From IMG/VR virus record IMGVR_UViG_3300044701_003160, positions 62,001-126,000 of that record: DNA of 64,000 nucleotides, one strand, 5' to 3'. The notes beneath the pieces are model-generated. The model was not told where the DNA came from. It saw nothing but the letters and a program-made list of their open reading frames with translations, and ran no database searches. Both the position numbers and the translations under genes were made by a program. Below, piece by piece: positions 10,269 to 58,370 of this stretch (the stretch's first letter is position 1; each line of letters begins with the position of its first letter).

Positions 10269-11078
10269 TCAGTCTATTTCAACGAATCCATCAGACCCAA
10301 CTGGAAGGCCAGAACCTCCCTCCGGTACATTAAAAAATCCATCAGATCCAACTGAAAGTCCACCCCCTCCGCCGGGAATATTAACGAATCCATCAGCGCC
10401 AATAGGAGGAATACCAGTTGCTGTTGTTTGTCCTGGTTGCATAGGTTTTTCAACTGCAACGGAGTTTCTTACATAACGAATAAAGGAAAATGAAACAGTG
10501 CATTTTAATAATTGAGAGGACTCATAAGAAACTGGTATTGAATTGATACTTAAAGGATACGCACGAATGAATTTATATTCTAATGCTGAACCAACATAAT
10601 CTCTCTCAAACTTTGTTATGTATAATGCATCAGTCTGATAATCATCTGGAAAATTTACACGATAAAAATAGTTTCTATTTTCCAAATCCTCTGCATTATT
10701 TTCACCGACACAATAAGAAATCCACCTTTCAAAAAAGTTTATAATTCCATAGTTTTTATCTACATAAAAAGTAAAATCAATGCGGTCGTCATACTGCCTT
10801 CTATATGCGGGTCTTTCCGTGACTCCAGTGTGATCATCAGTAATCTCATTTGTCATCAAAGAAGCACCAGGAAGTGATGCTTCAGAACAAGACAATTCAA
10901 TTAGTTCTTGATTTTTTCTTGCATTATAATCAGATCCAGGAAATCTTCCTTCACCCTGCTTAAGAAATGCTGCAGTGGCCGCTGGGGGTTGAAATCTACA
11001 AACATAATGAGAAGTTAATGCCGGTCTTAATAACTTCTGTTTTATCTCAAAGTTTTTAACTACAGTTGGTCCTGCCAT
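10269..11078 (-). CDS. Tail tube initiator / tube-like protein (gp54-like)
   Basis: LSCSEASLPG...YRRQYDDRIDFTFYVD...AYPLSINSIPVSY...CTVSFSF tube-fold motifs; Gly-rich repeated C-tail. Confidence 0.7.
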   Translation of the reverse strand: MAGPTVVKNFEIKQKLLRPALTSHYVCRFQPPAATAAFLKQGEGRFPGSDYNARKNQELIELSCSEASLPGASLMTNEITDDHTGVTERPAYRRQYDDRIDFTFYVDKNYGIINFFERWISYCVGENNAEDLENRNYFYRVNFPDDYQTDALYITKFERDYVGSALEYKFIRAYPLSINSIPVSYESSQLLKCTVSFSFIRYVRNSVAVEKPMQPGQTTATGIPPIGADGFVNIPGGGGGLSVGSDGFFNVPEGGSGLPVGSDGFVEID

Positions 11079-27430: not shown

Positions 27431-28947
27431 TCAACCGATTGAAGGAGCAGTGAGAGCAACTGGTGTTGCTTCTGCTGCTGCAAGGTCAAGTGGGAAGTTG
27501 TGCTTACAGTTTGGACTATATCTTCACCATACTCTTTATGAGGTTAGGTGTCGGACGCTATTGGTGTATTACATCTCACGCTTGAGAAACCACCTAGTCT
27601 CTGAACCTTCCAATCAAGTTCGTGATTGGCTTGGCTGCTGATTGCCCGTTAGGGTTTCCAGCAATTCATCCGAAGTTTATCTTACCTTTTCAGATAAGAG
27701 CGCCCACAAATCGAGCGTTGCGTTCATGCATGACTTCCATTCCAAGTCCTGCACGATTTAGGACATCTGCCCAAGTGTTAATAACTTTACCTTGACTATC
27801 AACGATAGACTGGTTGAAGTTGAAACCGTTGCACTGAACCCATAAGTTTACCATTCTTATGGAGTGGACTATATCTTCATCCATTTAGGATGTTGGGCGC
27901 TATTGGTGTATTACATCTCACGCTTGAGAAACCACCTAGTCTCTGAACCTTTCCAAGAAGCGTCTTGGACTTGGCTGCTGATTACCCAATATGGAGGGCT
28001 TCCAGCAATTCACCCAATGTTTACCGTCAAATTGCTAGGACGGGACCCCGACGATTGAGGTTAAATGCCATCGTAGAAACACCAAGAGCAGTGAACCAGA
28101 TGCCTACAACAGGCCAGGCAGCCAGGAAGAAGTGCAGTGAACGGGAGTTATTAAAGGAAGCATATTGAAAAATAAGGCGTCCAAAATACCCGTGAGCAGC
28201 AACGATGTTGTAGGTCTCTTCTTCTTGACCGAACTTATATCCGTAGTTCTGTGACTCATTCTCAGTAGTTTCACGAACCAGTGAAGAAGTCACCAGTGAA
28301 CCGTGCATAGCACTGAAGAGTGAACCACCGAACACACCAGCAACTCCAAGCATGTGGAAGGGGTGCATCAGGATATTGTGTTCTGCTTGGAAGACAAGCA
28401 TATAGTTAAACGTACCAGAGATACCAAGAGGCATCGCATCAGAGAAAGAACCTTGACCGAAAGGATAAACCAGGAATACGGCAGAAGCAGCAGCAACAGG
28501 TGCGCTGTAAGCAACACAGATCCAAGGACGCATACCTAGACGGTAAGAGAGTTCCCATTCACGTCCCATATAAGCATAGATGCCGATGAGGAAGTGAAAT
28601 ACAACGAGTTGGAAAGGTCCACCGTTATAAAGCCATTCATCAAGAGAAGCAGCTTCCCAGATAGGATAGAAGTGAAGTCCGATAGCATTAGAAGAAGGAA
28701 CAACGGCACCAGAGATGATGTTGTTTCCGTACATTAGAGAACCAGCAACTGGTTCACGAATGCCGTCGATGTCCACTGGGGGAGCACCAACGAAAGCGAT
28801 AATGAAGCAAGTCGTAGCAGCAAGCAGGCAAGGAATCATCAGGACTCCGAACCAACCAACATACAGACGATTGTTAGTGGAAGTAACCCACTCACAGAAT
28901 TGGTTCCAGGTATTTGTGGAACGTTGTTGAGCAATTGTAGCAGTCAT
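27431..28947 (-). CDS. psbA: Photosystem II D1 protein, three exons (28058-28947, 27714-27831, 27431-27502)
   Basis: Joined exons give 1080 nt = 359 aa + stop, restoring ...[12 protein letters not shown]...[14 protein letters not shown]... Confidence 0.97.
27503..27713 (-). mobile_element. Group I intron 2 of psbA (211 nt, no ORF), after codon A336
   Basis: 5' exon ends in U, intron ends in G; core elements TCAGAGACTA and AAGATATAGTCC; guide UUUGUGGGCG pairs exon 2 end and exon 3 start (CACAA). Confidence 0.93.
27832..28057 (-). mobile_element. Group I intron 1 of psbA (226 nt, no ORF), within codon L297
   Basis: Exon ...AACCU / intron ...CAGUG / exon CAACGG restores frame; core AGAGACTA and AAGATATAGTCC; guide GGGGU pairs ACCU. 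Confidence 0.9.
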
Positions 28948-28949
28948 TT

Positions 28950-29070
28950 GTTTTAAAAGGGTAAGTATGATTCAGGGGGACTGAATGGTTACAAGTATTC
29001 CCACGACACCCTCCATCGTGGGTATGAGGGATGCTTTACTTCTCGTGATCCCGGTTGGAGAAGATTCCGT
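28950..29070 (-). ncRNA. Structured psbA 5' leader (PhotoRC-II-like RNA motif)
   Basis: Hairpins CTTCTC/GAGAAG, CCCACGA/TCGTGGG and ATTCAG/CTGAAT between promoter and psbA ATG; family name from recall. Confidence 0.6.
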
Positions 29071-29112
29071 AGGTAAGAAATTGTTACATTCCTTAACCCC
29101 GTGTATGTATAT

Positions 29113-50643: not shown

Positions 50644-50649
50644 GGGTCT

Positions 50650-50842
50650 TTTAGGCTCGCCACCAATTCTTTGACTGGAAATTGGAAACCAGGCGGGAGT
50701 AAGATCCCATCCGCACCACCAATCCTTGAGAGAGATTGGAAACTCATAATAGGGTCATATTGACTCCACCAGTACTTTTAGAGTCTCTCCGTGACTAAAG
50801 GGGTTCATCACCGACCAGGGCTAGTTTTAAGTCATACCGGGA
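50650..50842 (-). ncRNA. Structured ~190-nt RNA (manA/wcaG-type cyanophage motif candidate)
   Basis: No ORF; hairpins CCAATC/GATTGG, GCGG/CCGC, CCAATT/AATTGG; UGGUG and UGGCG motifs; lies between tRNA region and glycan genes. Confidence 0.6.
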
Positions 50843-52314: not shown

Positions 52315-52388
52315 TCGGGACGATAGGATTTGAACCTACGGCCTGACGCTCCCAAAGCGCCTGCTCTACCAAACTGAGCTACGTCCCG
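52315..52388 (-). tRNA. tRNA-Pro(TGG)
   Basis: CGGGACG/CGTCCCG; anticodon loop TTTGGGA. Confidence 0.95.
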
Positions 52389-52412
52389 ATTTCTTTGTGT
52401 ATCCTATCAGGT

Positions 52413-52571
52413 TTATCGAACCCTGTCAACCACCTGAAGAACACCGTGAGCATAAAAGAAAAGGAGTACTGAACCGATTGTTGCTGATATTATTGTAGCA
52501 GTTTTATTGTGCCTGTCAATGGCTTTTGCAACTGACTGGTCGATCATTTCTTGAACTTCTTCAGGTGTCAT
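52413..52571 (-). CDS. Small membrane protein (52 aa)
   Basis: MTPEEVQEMIDQSVAKAIDRHNK...IGSVLLFFYAHGVL. Confidence 0.55.
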   Translation of the reverse strand: MTPEEVQEMIDQSVAKAIDRHNKTATIISATIGSVLLFFYAHGVLQVVDRVR

Positions 52572-52716
52572 TTTTATTACCAAGAAATTTTGCCAGAGGA
52601 TCTCTTTTTGTTCTAATTATTTCACACGCTCTTTTATAAAACATATTATCAGTATTACCTGATGATTCAAACGTTTCCTTTATTTTAACCCAATTTTGGT
52701 ATGTGTGATCATCCAT
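52561..52716 (-). CDS. Small hypothetical protein (51 aa)
   Basis: MDDHTYQNWVKIKETFESSGNTDNMFYKRACEI... Confidence 0.6.
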   Translation of the reverse strand: MDDHTYQNWVKIKETFESSGNTDNMFYKRACEIIRTKRDPLAKFLGNKNDT

Positions 52717-52803
52717 TTGGGATCTATACGTTATTATTACTAATTTAGTTTAATTAACAATCTTATTTTGTCAAGTATGTGTGGATATCATCATAATTTT
52801 AAA

Positions 52804-52888
52804 CGGTGAGGAAAGGATTCGAACCTTCGGATGCTTTCACATCGACTGTTTTCAAGACAGTTGCCTTAAACCACTCGGCCACCTCACC
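52804..52888 (-). tRNA. tRNA-Ser(TGA)
   Basis: GGTGAGG/CCTCACC; ACTGT-CTTGAAA-ACAGT; long variable arm. Confidence 0.95.
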
Positions 52889-53243
52889 ATATTATTTCCA
52901 ATAAACCAGCGTGTATTTTACGATGACACGGAGAACAGAGCATATAACATTTATCTATTTCTGTTTGGATTGTCTCCCATTTGTATCCTTTTCCCGCTAA
53001 GTAAGAAACTTCCTTTTTCTTATTTTCTGCCTCAATATGATGAAAATCAAAACAACAGGGAGGATGGTAATCTCCACAAGCATCACAACAACCTTTTTCA
53101 AGTTTTAATTGATTTAGTTTTTCAACCATCAACTTTTTATTATTATATTCTCTTTGGTATTTAATTTTTTTAAATTCTCCAGATTGTTTTTGAGCCCAAA
53201 GACGTTGTGCTTCTTTTTGCTTTTCTTTATCTTTATAAGGCAT
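52884..53243 (-). CDS. HNH endonuclease
   Basis: CDACG..HPPCCFDFHH...EIDKCYMLCSPCHRKIH; stop overlaps tRNA-Ser 5' end. Confidence 0.85.
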   Translation of the reverse strand: MPYKDKEKQKEAQRLWAQKQSGEFKKIKYQREYNNKKLMVEKLNQLKLEKGCCDACGDYHPPCCFDFHHIEAENKKKEVSYLAGKGYKWETIQTEIDKCYMLCSPCHRKIHAGLLEIIW

Positions 53244-53284
53244 ATCATTTAAAAGGTTCTAATTTATTTATAAAAAATTAGAAC

Positions 53285-53536
53285 TTAACGGACTTCGAAA
53301 TCAAGACGCCTCACTTTTCTTTGGCGTCTTTGTTCTTGCCAGGCAATATCCTGGGAGGTTAACACGTTTGTTTTTGGTGTTTCCTTTAATGAGTTTAGCA
53401 TTACAATACGGGATAAGTCAACTGCCGAAATCTTATCTCCTCTAATTGTTGCCATATTGGGACATCCACAACTAATAGTTTTTGAAGAGTGCCCCACTAA
53501 TTCTTTACTGCAATCTTTGCATCTTATTGATATCAT
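53285..53536 (-). CDS. Hypothetical Zn-ribbon protein
   Basis: CKDC...CGCPN. Confidence 0.65.
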   Translation of the reverse strand: MISIRCKDCSKELVGHSSKTISCGCPNMATIRGDKISAVDLSRIVMLNSLKETPKTNVLTSQDIAWQEQRRQRKVRRLDFEVR

Positions 53537-53551
53537 TTTTTGTTACCGTAA

Positions 53552-53986
53552 TCACTGTAAATGTGCTCTTAATTGCCAAACAAATTTTCCGTGAGATTCC
53601 ATCAAATCTTGAACTAGATTGGCAGTTGCATAAGATTTTTGAGTTTCAGACTCTTCCGAAATTTCACCCATTAACTCACAAAATTTAGTATTGTTATCCA
53701 AAAGTTCTTGAAGCATCTCTTTTGCTCCCGTAGAACTTGTTGCTTCTTTGATTTGAGTTACTTCAAGCATTCTTGAAAGAGAACTTAAAGGTTTTACATT
53801 TAAGTATCTCATATGTTCGGAGAGCCTGTCAATCTCTTCAAACATCGTTTCATATTGTCCACCAAACAGTTGATGAAGTTGAGTAAAGTCTTCACCTACA
53901 ACATTCCAGTGAAATGCCCAGGTTTTATGGAACAAAACAAAAAGTGATGACTGAGCATCACTGAGTAATTTATAAAGTTTTTCCAT
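53552..53986 (-). CDS. dps: Dps/ferritin-like DNA-protection protein
   Basis: KTWAFHWNVVG.DF.QLH.LF..QY...EIDRLSEH ferroxidase pattern. Confidence 0.9.
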   Translation of the reverse strand: MEKLYKLLSDAQSSLFVLFHKTWAFHWNVVGEDFTQLHQLFGGQYETMFEEIDRLSEHMRYLNVKPLSSLSRMLEVTQIKEATSSTGAKEMLQELLDNNTKFCELMGEISEESETQKSYATANLVQDLMESHGKFVWQLRAHLQ

Positions 53987-54014
53987 TATACTTTTTTTCA
54001 AGTATTTATGCAAA

Positions 54015-54087
54015 TGGGAGCAGAGGGATTCGAACCCCCGACATTCTGCGTGTAAAGCAGACGCTGCTACCGCTGAGCTATGCTCCC
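54015..54087 (-). tRNA. tRNA-Val(TAC)
   Basis: GGGAGCA/TGCTCCC; TCTGC-TTTACAC-GCAGA. Confidence 0.95.
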
Positions 54088-54090
54088 TTG

Positions 54091-54162
54091 TCCTCTGTCT
54101 GGGAATCGAACCCAGTATCCGTGTGTGTTGTCCACCCGTCCTTACCAATAGACTACCAGAGG
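54091..54162 (-). ncRNA. tRNA-like element with non-canonical anticodon arm
   Basis: CCTCTG/CAGAGG acceptor, GTCT..TGGTAA..GGAC D-arm, CTGGG-TTCGATT-CCCAG T-arm; anticodon arm GGTGG-ACAACAC-ACACG lacks U33 and pairs poorly. Confidence 0.7.
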
Positions 54163-54164
54163 TA

Positions 54165-54236
54165 CTCCACAACCTGGATTCGAACCAGGGACCAATCGAT
54201 TAACAGTCGATGGCTCTACCGCTGAGCTATTGTGGA
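54165..54236 (-). tRNA. tRNA-Asn(GTT)
   Basis: TCCACAA/TTGTGGA; ATCGA-CTGTTAA-TCGAT. Confidence 0.95.
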
Positions 54237-54244
54237 ATGTTCTA

Positions 54245-54448
54245 CTACTTAGAACTTACAAAATCATTAATCGTTTCTGCTTGCTTAAGAACATCCTGTA
54301 GAGTTGGAAACTCTGGATAATCCATCTTCACAGTATTTGAAGAATTTAGATTCCAATAACGAGCAGTATCCATTTCAGTACTGAACTGATCATTTAGCAT
54401 ATTATATGCTTGCTTGAAGATTTCAAAACGAAGTTCGTAAGGTGTCAT
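54245..54448 (-). CDS. Hypothetical protein
   Basis: MTPYELRFEIFKQA...AETINDFVS; GGAG RBS. Confidence 0.7.
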   Translation of the reverse strand: MTPYELRFEIFKQAYNMLNDQFSTEMDTARYWNLNSSNTVKMDYPEFPTLQDVLKQAETINDFVSSK

Positions 54449-54495
54449 TTATTTACTCCCGTGTGTTTGTGTGTTTAAAGAACCTGAAGGTTCAG

Positions 54496-54566
54496 AGCGA
54501 GTGACGGGGATCGAACCCGTGACAAGAGCTTGGAAGGCTCGCATGTTACCGCTACACCACACTCGC
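54496..54566 (-). tRNA. tRNA-Gly(TCC)
   Basis: GCGAGTG/CACTCGC; anticodon loop CTTCCAA; own promoter TTGACA-N17-TATGAT (54576-54604). Confidence 0.95.
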
Positions 54567-54605
54567 AATAAGACAATCATAAGGTATAAAACCCAGATTG
54601 TCAAG

Positions 54606-54687
54606 TGCCCAAAAGAGGACTTGAACCTCCACAGATAAATCTACAGGAACCTAAACCCTGCGCGTCTACCAATTCCGCCATTTGGGC
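54606..54687 (-). tRNA. tRNA-Leu(TAG)
   Basis: GCCCAAA/TTTGGGC; CAGGG-TTTAGGT-TCCTG; variable arm. Confidence 0.93.
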
Positions 54688-54690
54688 GGA

Positions 54691-54763
54691 TGGAGAATAG
54701 GAGACTCGAACTCCTGACACCCGCCTTGCAAAGGCCGCGCTCTACCAACTGAGCTAATTCCCC
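54691..54763 (-). tRNA. tRNA-Ala(TGC)
   Basis: GGGGAAT/ATTCTCC with G3:U70; loop TTTGCAA. Confidence 0.93.
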
Positions 54764-54840
54764 AAGATGGAGTAAGTGTGATATACCTCATAAGGATATA
54801 ACAGTGACTTACCCTCTATCACTTTTATATATTACACCAG

Positions 54841-55392
54841 TTATTCGATGGTGTCAAGTCTTAATTTAGAGTGTATCTCTCTGTGACAATTAGAACAAAC
54901 ACATATACATTTGTCAAGTTCCTTTTTTTGGTCTTCCCATTTTCGTATTTTAATGTTACCAAAGTTTTTATCTTTTTGTGATGGGTCTATATGATGAAAC
55001 TCTAAAGCATCGATACACTTATCATATCCGCACCTCTCACATTTTCCACCTTTATAATCAACTGCTCTTTTTTTATTATTTTGCCACCTTTCTACAGAAT
55101 ATTTGTTGTGGCATTTTTTACAATTTGCTTGCCATATTTTTTTACTTTCACGCCAATATCCAGTTTTTTCTGTCAAAAGAACTTTACATTTAGAGCAATT
55201 TTGAATTGGTTTACCATCTACTTTTAAAATTGGATTTAAAATATATCCATCTTTAAATGTTTTATGTTTTGTTTTTAATTGATATTTGTCTAACCAATAC
55301 CTAACAGTGGTTTTTCCTTTACTTTCAAGTTTAGATATTTGTGAGGTTGACATTCCATCTTCAATATATTCTATTAATTTTTGTTTATCCAT
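54841..55392 (-). CDS. HNH endonuclease with N-terminal HTH
   Basis: YKGGKCERCGY.KC..ALEFHH.DP...ELDKC..VCSNCHREIH; contains TTGACA-N17-TAATAT promoter (54829-54857) for downstream tRNAs. Confidence 0.9.
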   Translation of the reverse strand: MDKQKLIEYIEDGMSTSQISKLESKGKTTVRYWLDKYQLKTKHKTFKDGYILNPILKVDGKPIQNCSKCKVLLTEKTGYWRESKKIWQANCKKCHNKYSVERWQNNKKRAVDYKGGKCERCGYDKCIDALEFHHIDPSQKDKNFGNIKIRKWEDQKKELDKCICVCSNCHREIHSKLRLDTIE

Positions 55393-55438
55393 TAGTCCAA
55401 AGGAAATATATTATTATTTATACAATTGAACTATTTAA

Positions 55439-55511
55439 CAGGCGTACCTGGATTTGAACCAGGGATAAGGCTTTAGAAGAGCCGTGTGATAATCCACTTC
55501 ACCATACGCCC
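55439..55511 (-). tRNA. tRNA-Arg(TCT)
   Basis: GGGCGTA/TACGCCT; GGCT-CTTCTAA-AGCC. Confidence 0.92.
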
Positions 55512-55624
55512 ATAAGGAACCTCCCTGTTTGTGCATCGTTGAGAGGCATAGGAGGTGTGGGATTTATGAGAAGTTTGGACCTCCTCCACCCGTGAAACTA
55601 CTATAAGGCATCAGAGCACTAAAG

Positions 55625-55856: not shown

Positions 55857-56336
55857 TTACTCTAAGGGCGTTTCACGAGGGTCTGGAGCAACCCAAGCAC
55901 CACGAATACCCATAGTACCGTCAGGAAACTCATAATAAATTGCATTCTCTACAATCAACTTCTGGAGTTTATCATATTTGTCTTTATTGATTTCTTCTAG
56001 AATGTTCTTGTTTTTCATATTGATAACTCTGTTTTTTTCTTCTTGAAGTTCATAATTTCTTATTGCACTATCAACTTCTGTTTGTATCTTTTGTTTGAGT
56101 AGTTCTGAATCATTATTAATTTGTTCGTTTAATTCATTATCAATATCGTCAATGATACTATCGGGCAAATCCCATTTGATAAGTTTTCTCAACTCATTAT
56201 AATACTTTAAAACATCTTGTTTTGTTATTCCACACTTAGTAGTCAAAAACGCAAGTGAGGATGCTATCAAAATAGCAATCAAAGAACGCTTTGGAGTTAG
56301 TCTTACTTTAAATGAGAACTCAGGAATTCCTTTCAT
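55857..56336 (-). CDS. Hypothetical protein with N-terminal membrane anchor
   Basis: LIAILIASSLAFL then acidic coiled coil. Confidence 0.65.
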   Translation of the reverse strand: MKGIPEFSFKVRLTPKRSLIAILIASSLAFLTTKCGITKQDVLKYYNELRKLIKWDLPDSIIDDIDNELNEQINNDSELLKQKIQTEVDSAIRNYELQEEKNRVINMKNKNILEEINKDKYDKLQKLIVENAIYYEFPDGTMGIRGAWVAPDPRETPLE

Positions 56337-56613: not shown

Positions 56614-56896
56614 CCAACATCTTATTAGTATCTATATTCTTTTTCGGTTCTCGTAGTTTCTTTGTATCAAAAGTCAAAGTTGGAGTTACAGACCCATCAT
56701 TCTCTACTTTCACCTTTGCCCCAAATGGAGTTCCTTTTGGTTGTATCTCTACAGAATTATGAGAGTTTAATTTAATATCGCCAATATCAGTCTTTACTTT
56801 TAAATATCCTGCCTTTGCGGCAATATCAACAATATCTTCTGGTTCTTCTGGAAGATTATCTATGGACATAAAAAAGGGGAGTATAGAACTCCCCAA
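56576..56896 (-). CDS. Hypothetical protein (start uncertain)
   Basis: Likely start MSIDNLPEE just after a terminator hairpin. Confidence 0.55.
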   Translation of the reverse strand: MGSSILPFFMSIDNLPEEPEDIVDIAAKAGYLKVKTDIGDIKLNSHNSVEIQPKGTPFGAKVKVENDGSVTPTLTFDTKKLREPKKNIDTNKMLDDAIDDFWEGQV

Positions 56897-56919: not shown

Positions 56920-57561
56920 TCAAACTTCAGTAAGAACCATTTTATTTGCATAACCATAAGCAAAGTCAGTTCTTGCTCCGTGATGACCCCAACGAATCCA
57001 CTTTCTAGCAAGTCGCATATAATCAGTAATAGACTTACCAGGTGTTTTCATCTGGGTTTCAATCATCTTCCAATCACCTTCGTGCAGCATATAGTCAAGT
57101 TGTGCATCCAGTGAGGAAGGATTAGCACCAATACGAGCAGCATGTCTTCCTAGTCCATAAAAACGAGGAGCATTAGTCCATTGGATAAGACCATACCCCC
57201 CACCACAGTTAGGATAGGAAGTTCTAGCACCACCTTCACAGATATTGGGAGTGAAGGTAGATTCTTGTCGGATATTGCCCATAATGGTTGCTAGGGCGTT
57301 TTTGTCAGTGATTCCTCGTTTCTGTAAGAATTCCAGAGTACGGGACTCATTAGTATTACATCCTTTACAAACTAATCGTTTTACTTTAGGTTTCTCGGGA
57401 ACAACCTCTTTGGTCTCTGTCTCTTGAGTAGGACCTTCAGGAACAATTGCAAATGGTTGTTGTACTGAAGATGTTGCCATACTCGGTGTTGGCAGTGTTG
57501 CCGCTGATGTTGCAACCGCACCTAAAAGAGCTACGGTTACATTTGTTAGGTTTTTAAGCAT
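56920..57561 (-). CDS. Exported phage-tail-lysozyme-family cell-wall hydrolase
   Basis: Signal peptide, Pro/Thr linker, ALATIMGNIRQES...GYGLIQWT...LDAQLDY. Confidence 0.8.
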   Translation of the reverse strand: MLKNLTNVTVALLGAVATSAATLPTPSMATSSVQQPFAIVPEGPTQETETKEVVPEKPKVKRLVCKGCNTNESRTLEFLQKRGITDKNALATIMGNIRQESTFTPNICEGGARTSYPNCGGGYGLIQWTNAPRFYGLGRHAARIGANPSSLDAQLDYMLHEGDWKMIETQMKTPGKSITDYMRLARKWIRWGHHGARTDFAYGYANKMVLTEV

Positions 57562-57692
57562 TTAGTTAAATTGAATTCGGCATCCGTATAGAAAGGGGGT
57601 CCACCCTCTTCTCAAAGGGCACTTTCCACGGCTCTAGGTGTCACGATCAAAATCTCATAACAAAAAACCCTGCTCATAACAGGGATTTTTAC

Positions 57693-57721
57693 ATTATAAG
57701 TTATTATTTAGAATTTGTCAA
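57693..57721 (-). promoter_or_regulatory. Sigma70 promoter upstream of lysozyme leader
   Basis: TTGACA(57716-57721)-N17-TATAAT(57693-57698). Confidence 0.8.
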
Positions 57722-57730
57722 GGAATCGGG

Positions 57731-57949
57731 TTACCGAATATCCAGTTCTTCCTCATCAGTCCATCCTTGTTCTTCTAAACAAAGATAATCAAGTTCTTCG
57801 GTTCCATCAGGAATATTAATCCACTCATCAAACTCTGCAGCAAGGGCTTTGGCATTTTTGTGACGATCTGCATCGTGAAGTAATTGAATTTTTTCAATTG
57901 CCCAATCTCTAACTTGTGCTACGGGTTCACTTTCAATCTGAGTTTCCAT
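57731..57949 (-). CDS. Hypothetical acidic protein
   Basis: Likely start METQIESEP; overlaps upstream stop. Confidence 0.6.
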   Translation of the reverse strand: METQIESEPVAQVRDWAIEKIQLLHDADRHKNAKALAAEFDEWINIPDGTEELDYLCLEEQGWTDEEELDIR

Positions 57950-58370
57950 AGTAATCTTTTCTGAAGTATCTGGAGAGGACGTTTGAATTATAGAAGGCTG
58001 GGACTCCGTTGTCAAGAGATTCTGTGAGGACATTATTGAGGAAGAGTTGTCTTGTCTCCTCATAGTTTGTTTTGCCCTTTGTTTTATGTAATGATATGAT
58101 AGTTCGACTAAAATTTTCTCTGCCAATTTTGTCAATGTCTTCTTTAAGTTCCGGACAAGACCCATAATAGTTTTTCCAATCAGATTCAGATTTTACTTTT
58201 CTTTTTTTCCCTTTAGGAGTTCTAAACTGCCAAAAATACTTCCTACCAACATATCTCCTACCATTAAGATTATTCTTGATAAGATAAACAAAACCAAAAT
58301 AATCTTGAATATCACCAGACTCAAAAGGTTTATCATTATAATACCACGGATTAGTATAACTGCAACTCAT
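57933..58370 (-). CDS. GIY-YIG-like (Seg-type) protein
   Basis: FGFVYLIKN..NGRRYVGRK...ESDWKNYYGS...E. Confidence 0.7.
   Translation of the reverse strand: MSCSYTNPWYYNDKPFESGDIQDYFGFVYLIKNNLNGRRYVGRKYFWQFRTPKGKKRKVKSESDWKNYYGSCPELKEDIDKIGRENFSRTIISLHKTKGKTNYEETRQLFLNNVLTESLDNGVPAFYNSNVLSRYFRKDYYGNSD

What the first reader, a model, noticed from the sequence alone, without database searches (positions are those of the whole stretch)
57570..57690. Unassigned structured leader upstream of an exported cell-wall hydrolase
Seen (minus strand): promoter, then a terminator-like hairpin (AATCCCTG/CAGGGTT-T), then a GC-rich multistem: CCGT/ACGG, GAAAG/CTTTC, and GCCCTTT-GAGA-AGAGGGT with a GNRA loop, ending ~15 nt before the ATG. 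Known: cell-wall hydrolase genes are frequent riboswitch targets. I cannot assign this to a known family. Inference: candidate new cis-regulatory RNA.
Basis: inference. Interest (0 to 1): 0.6.

Follow-up and report, generated by a model that had tools for sequence, protein, structure and literature searches.

The report
Conserved cyanophage leader RNA before wall hydrolases
The stretch is a real, previously uncatalogued structured RNA in the 5' leader of an exported cell-wall-cutting enzyme gene of freshwater cyanophages; it is kept even when the enzyme gene behind it is swapped, so it probably controls how that enzyme is made.

Summary
On the minus strand there is a perfect sigma-70 promoter, a stem-loop with a U run, then an 18-bp hairpin, and then the ATG of a 213-aa Phage_lysozyme2 protein.

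The hairpin and its flanks recur upstream of homologous genes in well over 150 distinct IMG/VR cyanophage sequences and in two cultured phages, S-SRM01 and DSL-LC03. Covariation is strong: 92% of cells are paired against 77% in shuffles, and 17 of 18 pairs show compensatory changes.

The hairpin sequence is free to change. The flanks are almost invariant: 5' (U)AGAG, and 3' AUG-YNGAR-UUC followed by a fixed 11-nt spacer to the start codon.

There is one copy per phage genome. It always sits upstream of an exported peptidoglycan hydrolase, either Phage_lysozyme2 or an RlpA-like DPBB protein. A short form occurs in 190–280 kb phage contigs.

It has no Rfam 15 match, no hit in 151 sampled genomes of one host family, and no paper was found describing it.

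The promoter plus stem-loop piece resembles the known PeSL elements and is dispensable.

My best reading is a new cis-acting translational control element, more likely an operator for a trans-acting factor than a metabolite riboswitch. The mechanism is inferred, not shown.

The parts
57693..57721 (-). Sigma-70-type promoter TTGACA-N17-TATAAT. Its spacer holds a late-promoter-like box, CTAAATA, at 57711..57705.
   Evidence: One search gives a 12/12 match. TAAATA lies inside the spacer in 126 of 143 unique leaders. Overlapping early and late promoters, and the late box NATAAATA, are described for cyanomyoviruses (PMC2984593).
57662..57684 (-). Stem-loop 1, CCCUG-UUAUGAG-CAGGG, plus a U6 run. It looks like a terminator and sits at the predicted 5' end of the transcript. 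Together with the promoter it forms a PeSL-like composite. It is variable and dispensable.
   Evidence: The stem changes sequence between leaders while remaining a stem. A U run of 5 or more is present in 77 of 143 leaders. The stem-loop is missing in DSL-LC03 and L087.
57647..57658 (-). Conserved box UUAUGAG..UUGA, which reads as a 3-codon mini-ORF AUG AGA UUU UGA. Its role is unexplained.
   Evidence: Found in 148 of 160 unique leaders against 35 +/- 5.5 in shuffles. Some leaders have ATT in place of ATG.
57632..57636 (-). Invariant single-stranded 5' flank, UAGAG.
   Evidence: AGAGC is invariant in 135 aligned leaders.
57584..57631 (-). Covarying hairpin. P1 is 57631-57628 with 57587-57584. 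P2 is 57627-57622 with 57595-57590. P3 is 57621-57614 with 57609-57602. The GAGA loop is 57613-57610, the 3' bulge GACCCC is 57601-57596, and the AU bulge is 57589-57588.
57573..57583 (-). Near-invariant 3' flank, AUG-CCGAA-UUC. The family consensus is AUG-YNGAR-UUC.
57562..57572 (-). AU-rich spacer. Its length is fixed at 11 nt while its sequence varies.
   Evidence: The spacer is 11 nt in 141 of 143 leaders. Some leaders carry GGAG here.
56920..57561 (-). Regulated gene: a 213-aa Phage_lysozyme2 (PF18013) protein with an N-terminal segment that looks like a signal peptide.
   Evidence: E 1.4e-18; phrog_512. The signal peptide is judged by inspection only.
56876..56894 (-). Intrinsic-terminator-like hairpin plus a T run that closes the transcription unit.

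Best explanation
This is a phage-specific cis-acting RNA element in the 5' untranslated leader of the mRNA for an exported peptidoglycan hydrolase.

A stable hairpin of freely varying sequence acts as a clamp. It holds two invariant single-stranded purine-rich strands side by side: UAGAG on the 5' side and AUG-YNGAR-UUC on the 3' side. This platform sits at a fixed 11 nt from the start codon, at the 5' edge of the ribosome-binding region.

I propose that the composite platform is bound by a trans-acting factor, most likely a phage or host RNA-binding protein or the 30S subunit itself. That binding would set the level or timing of translation initiation of the wall-cutting enzyme, which is transcribed from overlapping early-type and late-type promoters.

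Shown here: the structure, its conservation, the fixed spacing, the gene association, one copy per genome, and the absence from Rfam.

Inferred: that control acts on translation, and that the effector is a macromolecule.
For: - Covariation. In 82 diverse leaders 92% of cells are paired against 77% in shuffles, 17 of 18 pairs show double changes, and the covariation score is 0.477 against 0.212 shuffled and at most 0.115 slid. A 101-sequence set gives the same picture.
- P1 is replaced by at least six other Watson-Crick combinations, and in L071 the whole hairpin is replaced, while the flanks stay the same.
- The flanks AGAGC, GAUG, GA and UUC are invariant in 135 sequences.
- The spacer to the start codon is 11 nt in 141 of 143 leaders, although its sequence varies and in some leaders gains a GGAG.
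- The element is always in sense orientation, directly upstream of an exported Phage_lysozyme2 or RlpA-like DPBB gene at a syntenic spot.
- There is one copy per genome in the six phage records of 120-234 kb that were searched whole.
- A shorter relative with the same flank, spacer and start layout stands upstream of RlpA-like genes in 190-280 kb phage contigs.
- A mutual-information scan found no further covarying helix or pseudoknot that could close a ligand pocket.
- The bulge comes in three unrelated sequence types and the loop varies.
Against:
- No candidate trans-factor has been identified.
- Invariant flanks carry no covariation signal, so a tertiary fold or pseudoknot that involves them cannot be excluded.
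- The start region is only moderately open in thermodynamic predictions (unpaired probability about 0.6), and the flanks are not clearly single-stranded there.
- A purely constitutive enhancer or stabiliser would fit the same data.
Confidence: 0.5

Rival explanations
1. It is a metabolite- or ion-sensing riboswitch. The flanks and hairpin base would form the aptamer, and ligand binding would alter access of the ribosome to the start region 11 nt downstream.
For: It is a conserved, covarying structure in a 5' UTR with a block of invariant nucleotides. The GNRA loop and a kinking bulge could allow a compact fold. Cell-wall hydrolase genes are known riboswitch targets, for example ydaO/c-di-AMP (established knowledge). 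Cyanophages carry other orphan cis-regulatory motifs, and the same window holds wcaG and PhotoRC-II.
Against: The invariant bases lie outside any closed junction. No closing helix or pseudoknot is supported. The loop and bulge, which are the only internal unpaired parts, are not conserved. In L071 the whole hairpin is replaced. No terminator or Shine-Dalgarno-sequestering expression platform is visible. The element is confined to phages, whereas most riboswitch classes also occur in cells.
Confidence: 0.15
2. It is an RNA processing or stability element. The roughly 18-bp irregular hairpin with an asymmetric bulge would be an RNase III-type site, or the AU-rich stretch after the hairpin an RNase E site. 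Cleavage would separate the gene from upstream transcripts and set mRNA half-life or translatability.
For: The shape resembles phage T7 RNase III processing signals: two stems of about 10 and 8 bp with an asymmetric internal loop (established knowledge). It lies in a densely transcribed region with read-through from upstream promoters. The 5'-terminal stem-loop also points to control of decay.
Against: It does not explain the invariant flank sequences or the fixed 11-nt distance to the start codon. Short-form hairpins have only about 10 bp, which is too short for RNase III.
Confidence: 0.15
3. The conservation is at DNA level. The leader would be a PeSL-like linker kept uniform by recombination that shuffles gene cassettes, with no RNA function of its own.
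For: The promoter plus stem-loop composite resembles PeSLs, which mediate modular shuffling in T4-like phages (PMC2839356, PMC4122927). The gene behind the leader has been exchanged between lysozyme-like and RlpA-like types.
Against: Compensatory changes that preserve pairing, with G-U pairs that work on one strand only, show selection on RNA structure. Only one of the 15 sigma-70-like promoters found in the window combines a late-promoter box with a strong stem-loop just downstream. The core persists where the promoter and stem-loop are absent.
Confidence: 0.05
4. It is a tiny-uORF-coupled attenuator. Ribosomes on the 3-codon mini-ORF (AUG-AGN-NNN-UGA), and/or on the AUG-UAG at the hairpin base, would remodel the hairpin and so tune downstream initiation.
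For: The mini-ORF is present in 148 of 160 leaders against 35 in shuffles. Its in-frame stop is kept in variants of different length: M*, MNE*, MNYK*. The AUG at the hairpin base is invariant among the 135 aligned long-form leaders.
Against: Several leaders have AUU in place of AUG. No Shine-Dalgarno sequence precedes either AUG. The reading frame after the second AUG is not conserved: it runs 1 codon, 5 codons, or stays open. The leader sequences are related, so the counts are not independent.
Confidence: 0.07

Closest known systems
Orphan cyanophage cis-regulatory RNA motifs (wcaG RNA RF01761, PhotoRC-II RF01717; Weinberg et al. 2010, PMC2864571)
   Same: These are structured, covarying 5'-leader motifs largely confined to cyanophages and aquatic metagenomes, tied to particular gene classes, with unknown effectors. 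Both occur in this same window.
   Different: There is no sequence or structure relation: no covariance-model hit was found. The gene class differs, being exported peptidoglycan hydrolases. Here the conserved bases are in the flanks rather than in internal loops.
PeSL promoter-early stem-loop cassettes of T4-like phages (PMC2839356, PMC4122927)
   Same: The upstream part of the finding is a near-consensus sigma-70 promoter joined to a stem-loop that can terminate. It lies between small genes and is associated with replacement of the gene downstream.
   Different: PeSLs are repeated many times per genome and end at the Shine-Dalgarno sequence and ATG. Here only one such composite is seen in the window, and an extra conserved 71-nt RNA element lies between it and the ATG.
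Phage translational operators (T4 gp43 and RegA sites, MS2 coat-protein hairpin) and the T4 gene e early/late hairpin control (reviewed in PMC3014915; named from established knowledge, that review was listed but not read)
   Same: A hairpin with adjacent single-stranded bases sits next to the start site of a phage gene whose timing matters. The T4 lysozyme gene is also controlled at the level of translation by leader structure.
   Different: The start codon and ribosome-binding site are not inside the hairpin. No late promoter lies within the 5' arm. The binding factor is unknown, and there is no sequence similarity.
ydaO/c-di-AMP riboswitch (RF00379)
   Same: It controls cell-wall hydrolase genes, including RlpA-like and LysM-type ones (established knowledge).
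   Different: No covariance-model match was found at E<=10. The element here is much smaller, has a single hairpin, and lacks the pseudo-two-fold architecture.
T7-type RNase III processing hairpins (for example R1.1)
   Same: An irregular hairpin of about 18 bp with an asymmetric internal loop, lying between phage genes.
   Different: The conserved flanks and the fixed distance to the start codon are not features of those sites. Cleavage has not been tested.

Membership tests
Any Rfam 15 family | A covariance-model match at or near the gathering score | tested here: not met
   Nothing was found on the element at gathering score. At E<=10 there were only sub-threshold hits driven by the upstream terminator-like stem-loop, such as rimP at 20.9 against a cutoff of 47 bits. 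Five divergent representatives, the short forms and host rlpA leaders gave nothing.
Riboswitch (generic) | A conserved structured aptamer with covariation | tested here: met
Riboswitch (generic) | Invariant nucleotides lining a closed junction, internal loop or pseudoknot pocket | tested here: inconclusive
   The invariant bases are in open flanks. A mutual-information scan found no closing helix. The bulge and loop are variable.
Riboswitch (generic) | Specific ligand binding and a ligand-dependent expression platform | not testable with these tools
   This needs in-line probing and reporter assays.
ydaO / c-di-AMP riboswitch | A match to RF00379 and its pseudo-symmetric multi-helix fold | tested here: not met
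   One search gave no hit at E<=10. The element is a single hairpin.
PeSL (promoter-early stem-loop) | A near-consensus sigma-70 promoter adjacent to a stem-loop terminator in an intergenic spacer | tested here: met
   Of 143 leaders, 131 have the promoter and 77 have a U run.
PeSL (promoter-early stem-loop) | Many similar copies per genome flanking ORFans in hyperplastic regions | tested here: inconclusive
   The window has 15 sigma-70-like promoters, but only this one has a strong stem-loop just downstream. The whole genome was not surveyed.
T4 gene e / soc / I-TevI type early-late translational control | The ribosome-binding site is sequestered in a hairpin whose 5' arm holds the late promoter | tested here: not met
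   The start codon lies 22 nt past the hairpin. The TAAATA box lies 33-89 nt upstream of the element.
RNase III processing site | About two helical turns of irregular double-stranded RNA with an asymmetric internal loop | tested here: inconclusive
   Long forms have 18 bp plus a bulge. Short forms have about 10 bp. Cleavage cannot be tested here.

The most novel reading that the evidence does not exclude
This would be the first dedicated RNA switch, operated by a protein or a ligand, that times or doses the exported cell-wall hydrolase of cyanophages, whose lysis and wall-remodelling control is essentially unknown. It would be a portable leader module under which different hydrolase genes (lysozyme-like or RlpA-like) are exchanged between phage lineages.
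Probability: 0.3. Interest if true: 0.8.

Novelty: new member of a known kind. Interest (0 to 1): 0.62.

Why it matters
Cyanophages kill a large share of aquatic cyanobacteria. T4-like cyanophages lack the T4 r genes that act in lysis inhibition (PMC2984593), and how they control wall degradation is largely unknown.

A conserved leader that stays in place while two unrelated exported wall-cutting enzymes are swapped behind it marks those enzymes as tightly controlled. It also gives a concrete and small (about 70 nt) handle for experiments, which are possible in two cultured phages, S-SRM01 and DSL-LC03.

For RNA biology it adds an orphan motif with an unusual layout, a variable clamp hairpin with invariant flanks at a fixed distance from the start codon, that is absent from Rfam.

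It also corrects annotation. Public gene calls extend the RlpA-like reading frame upstream beyond the start used here, which would carry it across the short leader.

Tried and rejected

- Rfam at gathering and at permissive thresholds, on the window, on divergent members, on short forms and on host leaders: no family.
- Literature searches found no description of the element.

**Ideas tested and dropped**

- Mutual-information scan for a pseudoknot or a closing helix P0: only couplings between subtypes, no Watson-Crick partner.
- GARUUC-N11-start as a general translation signal of this phage: only this gene and two unconvincing others in 64 kb.
- Extra copies in the window or genome: none.
- Host origin. 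There is no model hit upstream of Cyanobium rlpA, nor in 151 sampled genomes of that family (only part of the candidates were scored per genome). The exact-pattern scan of 185,579 species' genomes gave only four phage-like contigs deposited in metagenome-assembled genomes (MAGs) and one chance match in a Gemmobacter coding region.
- The marine homolog in ACG-2014f lacks the leader.
- Pattern scans for more short forms gave few and nearly identical sequences, so covariation evidence for the short form is thin. The other pattern matches in that metagenome scan, including one on a contig labelled human-gut metagenome, lacked the short-form hairpin and RlpA-like gene and were not pursued.
- The weak model hit at L066:2153-2207 (GC 0.24) was treated as spurious.

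**Resemblances considered from memory and dropped**

- CsrA site (ACGGAUGU resembles RUACARGGAUGU): dropped because the GGA is lost in several members.
- Lambda boxB: the loop and stem are not conserved in short forms and there is no boxA.
- Hammerhead core and k-turn: the sequence does not fit the standard definitions.

**Uninformative**

- Thermodynamic accessibility of the start region.

Full report
**Context**

The window comes from a complete 219-kb virus record. It carries wcaG RNA, PhotoRC-II RNA, two group I introns and a tRNA cluster. Its closest cultured relatives are freshwater Synechococcus myoviruses of the Kyanoviridae. It is therefore a T4-like freshwater cyanophage.

**Observation**

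On the minus strand a 72-aa ORF ends at 57731. The following features come after it.

- A 12/12 sigma-70 promoter, TTGACA-N17-TATAAT, at 57721..57693. Its spacer holds CTAAATA.
- A stem-loop, CCCUG-UUAUGAG-CAGGG, plus U6 at 57684..57662.
- A conserved box, UUAUGAG..UUGA.
- The core element: UAGAG (57636-57632) and an 18-bp hairpin (57631-57584). The hairpin has P1 CCGU/ACGG, P2 GGAAAG/CUUUCU, P3 UGCCCUUU-GAGA-AGAGGGUG, a 3' bulge GACCCC and an AU bulge.
- The 3' flank AUGCCGAAUUC (57583-57573) and an 11-nt AU-rich spacer.
- The ATG at 57561 of a 213-aa protein. It matches Phage_lysozyme2 (PF18013, E 1.4e-18) and has an N-terminal segment that looks like a Sec signal peptide (by inspection).
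- A terminator-like hairpin at 56894..56876, which closes the unit.

**Is it real?**

I fetched 80 homologous loci through the protein, 120 through a DNA pattern, and more through RlpA-type proteins. The upstream regions align well.

I built a covariance model from 34 gapless sequences (R1) and used it to realign 101 and then 82 diverse matches.

| Measure | 82-sequence set | Shuffled control | Slid-partner controls |
|---|---|---|---|
| Cells that pair | 92.0% | 77.3% | 41-57% |
| Pairs with a change on both sides | 17 of 18 | 11.3 | 2-6 |
| Covariation score | 0.477 | 0.212 (0 of 500 shuffles as high) | at most 0.115 |

The 101-sequence set agrees, with 93.0% against 81.5% paired and a score of 0.395 against 0.198.

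P1 is CCGU/ACGG in most leaders. Elsewhere it is CCUA/UAGG, CCCA/UGGG, CCGG/CCGG, CCAG/CUGG or CUGGG/CCCAG. In L071 the whole hairpin has a different sequence. Frequent G-U pairs restrict the fold to the sense RNA.

**What is conserved**

- The flanks are the invariant part. AGAGC, GAUG, GA and UUC do not vary in 135 leaders.
- The 3' flank is AUG-UAGAG-UUC, AUG-CCGAA-UUC or AUG-UCGAA-UUC.
- The 3' bulge comes in three unrelated types: G/UACCCC, AACUUCUCC and AAGUGCGC.
- The loop is usually GAGA but can be GAAA, GGGA or AAAA.
- The spacer to the start codon is 11 nt in 141 of 143 unique leaders. Its sequence varies and sometimes contains GGAG.
- The start codon is ATG or GTG.

A mutual-information scan found no additional covarying helix.

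**Distribution and gene association**

- The model finds exactly one copy in the window's own genome and one in each of five other phage records of 120-234 kb.
- The gene behind the leader is either Phage_lysozyme2 (about 205-221 aa) or an RlpA-like DPBB_1 lytic transglycosylase (115-155 aa; PF03330, E about 1e-21). Both have signal-peptide-like N-termini.
- Both gene types sit at the same syntenic spot, followed by a phrog_3316 protein with a membrane anchor.
- Among 50,697 deposited phage genomes, only S-SRM01 and DSL-LC03 carry the element, and it is unannotated in both.
- The marine homolog in ACG-2014f lacks it.
- A short form occurs in 190-280 kb phage contigs, one of which carries psbA; no Gp23 hit was seen, but that Pfam search rang nowhere, its control genomes included, so it says nothing about the lineage. 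Its layout is a promoter, a 5' stem-loop, then CUGAGC-CGUG-GUUGC-loop-GCAAC-RAA-CACG-GAUGUYGAAYUC-N10/11-AUG, followed by an RlpA-like gene. In L306 the closing pair changes from C:G to U:A.
- Host Cyanobium rlpA genes have no such leader.
- 151 sampled genomes of that host family gave no model hit.
- An exact-pattern scan of one genome per prokaryotic species returned only phage-like contigs deposited in MAGs and one chance match.

**The upstream piece**

The promoter plus stem-loop resembles the composite promoter-terminator PeSL elements of T4-like phages, which also mediate gene-cassette shuffling (PMC2839356, PMC4122927). That fits the lysozyme/RlpA exchange seen here.

TAAATA lies inside the promoter spacer in 126 of 143 leaders. 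This matches the overlapping early and late promoters, and the NATAAATA late box, described for cyanomyoviruses (PMC2984593).

DSL-LC03 and L087 have only AATAAATA about 22 nt upstream of UAGAG, with no stem-loop. The terminator-like hairpin is therefore not part of the core. Only about half of the leaders have a U run.

**Mechanism**

The layout is a variable clamp hairpin with invariant open flanks, strictly spaced from the start codon. This is typical of a binding platform for a macromolecule at the edge of the ribosome-binding site. I therefore favour a translational operator or recruitment element (confidence about 0.5).

- A riboswitch remains possible (0.15), but it lacks a closed conserved pocket and a visible expression platform.
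- An RNase III or RNase E processing or stability role (0.15) fits the shape but not the flanks and the spacing.
- DNA-level homogenisation alone (0.05) is contradicted by the covariation.
- A conserved 3-codon mini-ORF is present in 148 of 160 leaders, and the AUG at the hairpin base is invariant among the aligned long-form leaders. Together they raise a uORF-coupling idea (0.07). It is weakened by AUU variants and by the reading frames after the second AUG, which are not conserved.

**Comparison and novelty**

No Rfam 15 family matches, and no paper describing the element was found. The closest in kind are the orphan cyanophage motifs wcaG and PhotoRC-II. The closest in working principle are phage translational operators. 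The promoter and stem-loop part is PeSL-like.

The element is a new member of a known kind, a cis-regulatory leader RNA. It is restricted to freshwater cyanophage lineages and tied to exported wall hydrolases.

Noticed in passing
window 57933-58370 (-) and 58015-57987 (-): A SegE-type GIY-YIG homing endonuclease gene (PF19835, E 3.6e-54) lies just upstream. A second perfect TTGACA-N17-TATAAT promoter sits inside its 3' end and would drive the 72-aa ORF at 57949..57731.
   Followed up: partly
window 57647-57658 (-), and the loop of stem-loop 1 at 57673-57679: The heptamer UUAUGAG occurs twice, once in the loop of stem-loop 1 and once just downstream. The second copy starts a conserved mini-ORF, AUG-AGN-NNN-UGA, found in 148 of 160 leaders. 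It can also pair with the -10 region (CUUAUAA) in transcripts that begin further upstream. Its role is unexplained.
   Followed up: partly
window 27491-28067 (-), 28987-29076 (-), 50649-50747 (-): There are two group I introns in tandem, a PhotoRC-II RNA and a wcaG RNA (Rfam gathering-level hits). These are typical furniture of a photosynthetic cyanophage.
   Followed up: no
window 55519-55555 (-): A 37-nt abiF RNA hit above the gathering score (44.9 against 37 bits) lies directly next to a tRNA at 55439-55511, within the tRNA cluster at 52315-55511.
   Followed up: no
L141:9525-13678: A related phage contig carries about 30 tRNA genes in one array, with a sub-threshold cyanobacterial tmRNA-like match at 10597-10810 (48 bits against a cutoff of 70).
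   Followed up: no
window 55857-56336 (-), L141:8471-8875: The hydrolase gene is followed in both gene classes by a conserved phrog_3316 protein with a basic N-terminus and one hydrophobic segment (..LSQCSG..). It could be a membrane partner of the hydrolase, holin- or spanin-like. This is speculation.
   Followed up: partly
P0001-P0022 (public gene calls) against L230:344-697: Public gene callers give the short-form RlpA-like proteins 127-169 aa, against the 117 aa obtained from the ATG used here; such calls would run upstream across the structured leader. The extra N-terminus is probably an annotation artefact.
   Followed up: no
L376:1082-1500, L380:1054-1500: Host Cyanobium rlpA has a roughly 420-nt upstream intergenic region with blocks shared between two genomes, for example GGCCGTTAAGTTTTCGTCGTTGTTAAC. 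It gives no Rfam hit and is unrelated to the phage leader.
   Followed up: partly
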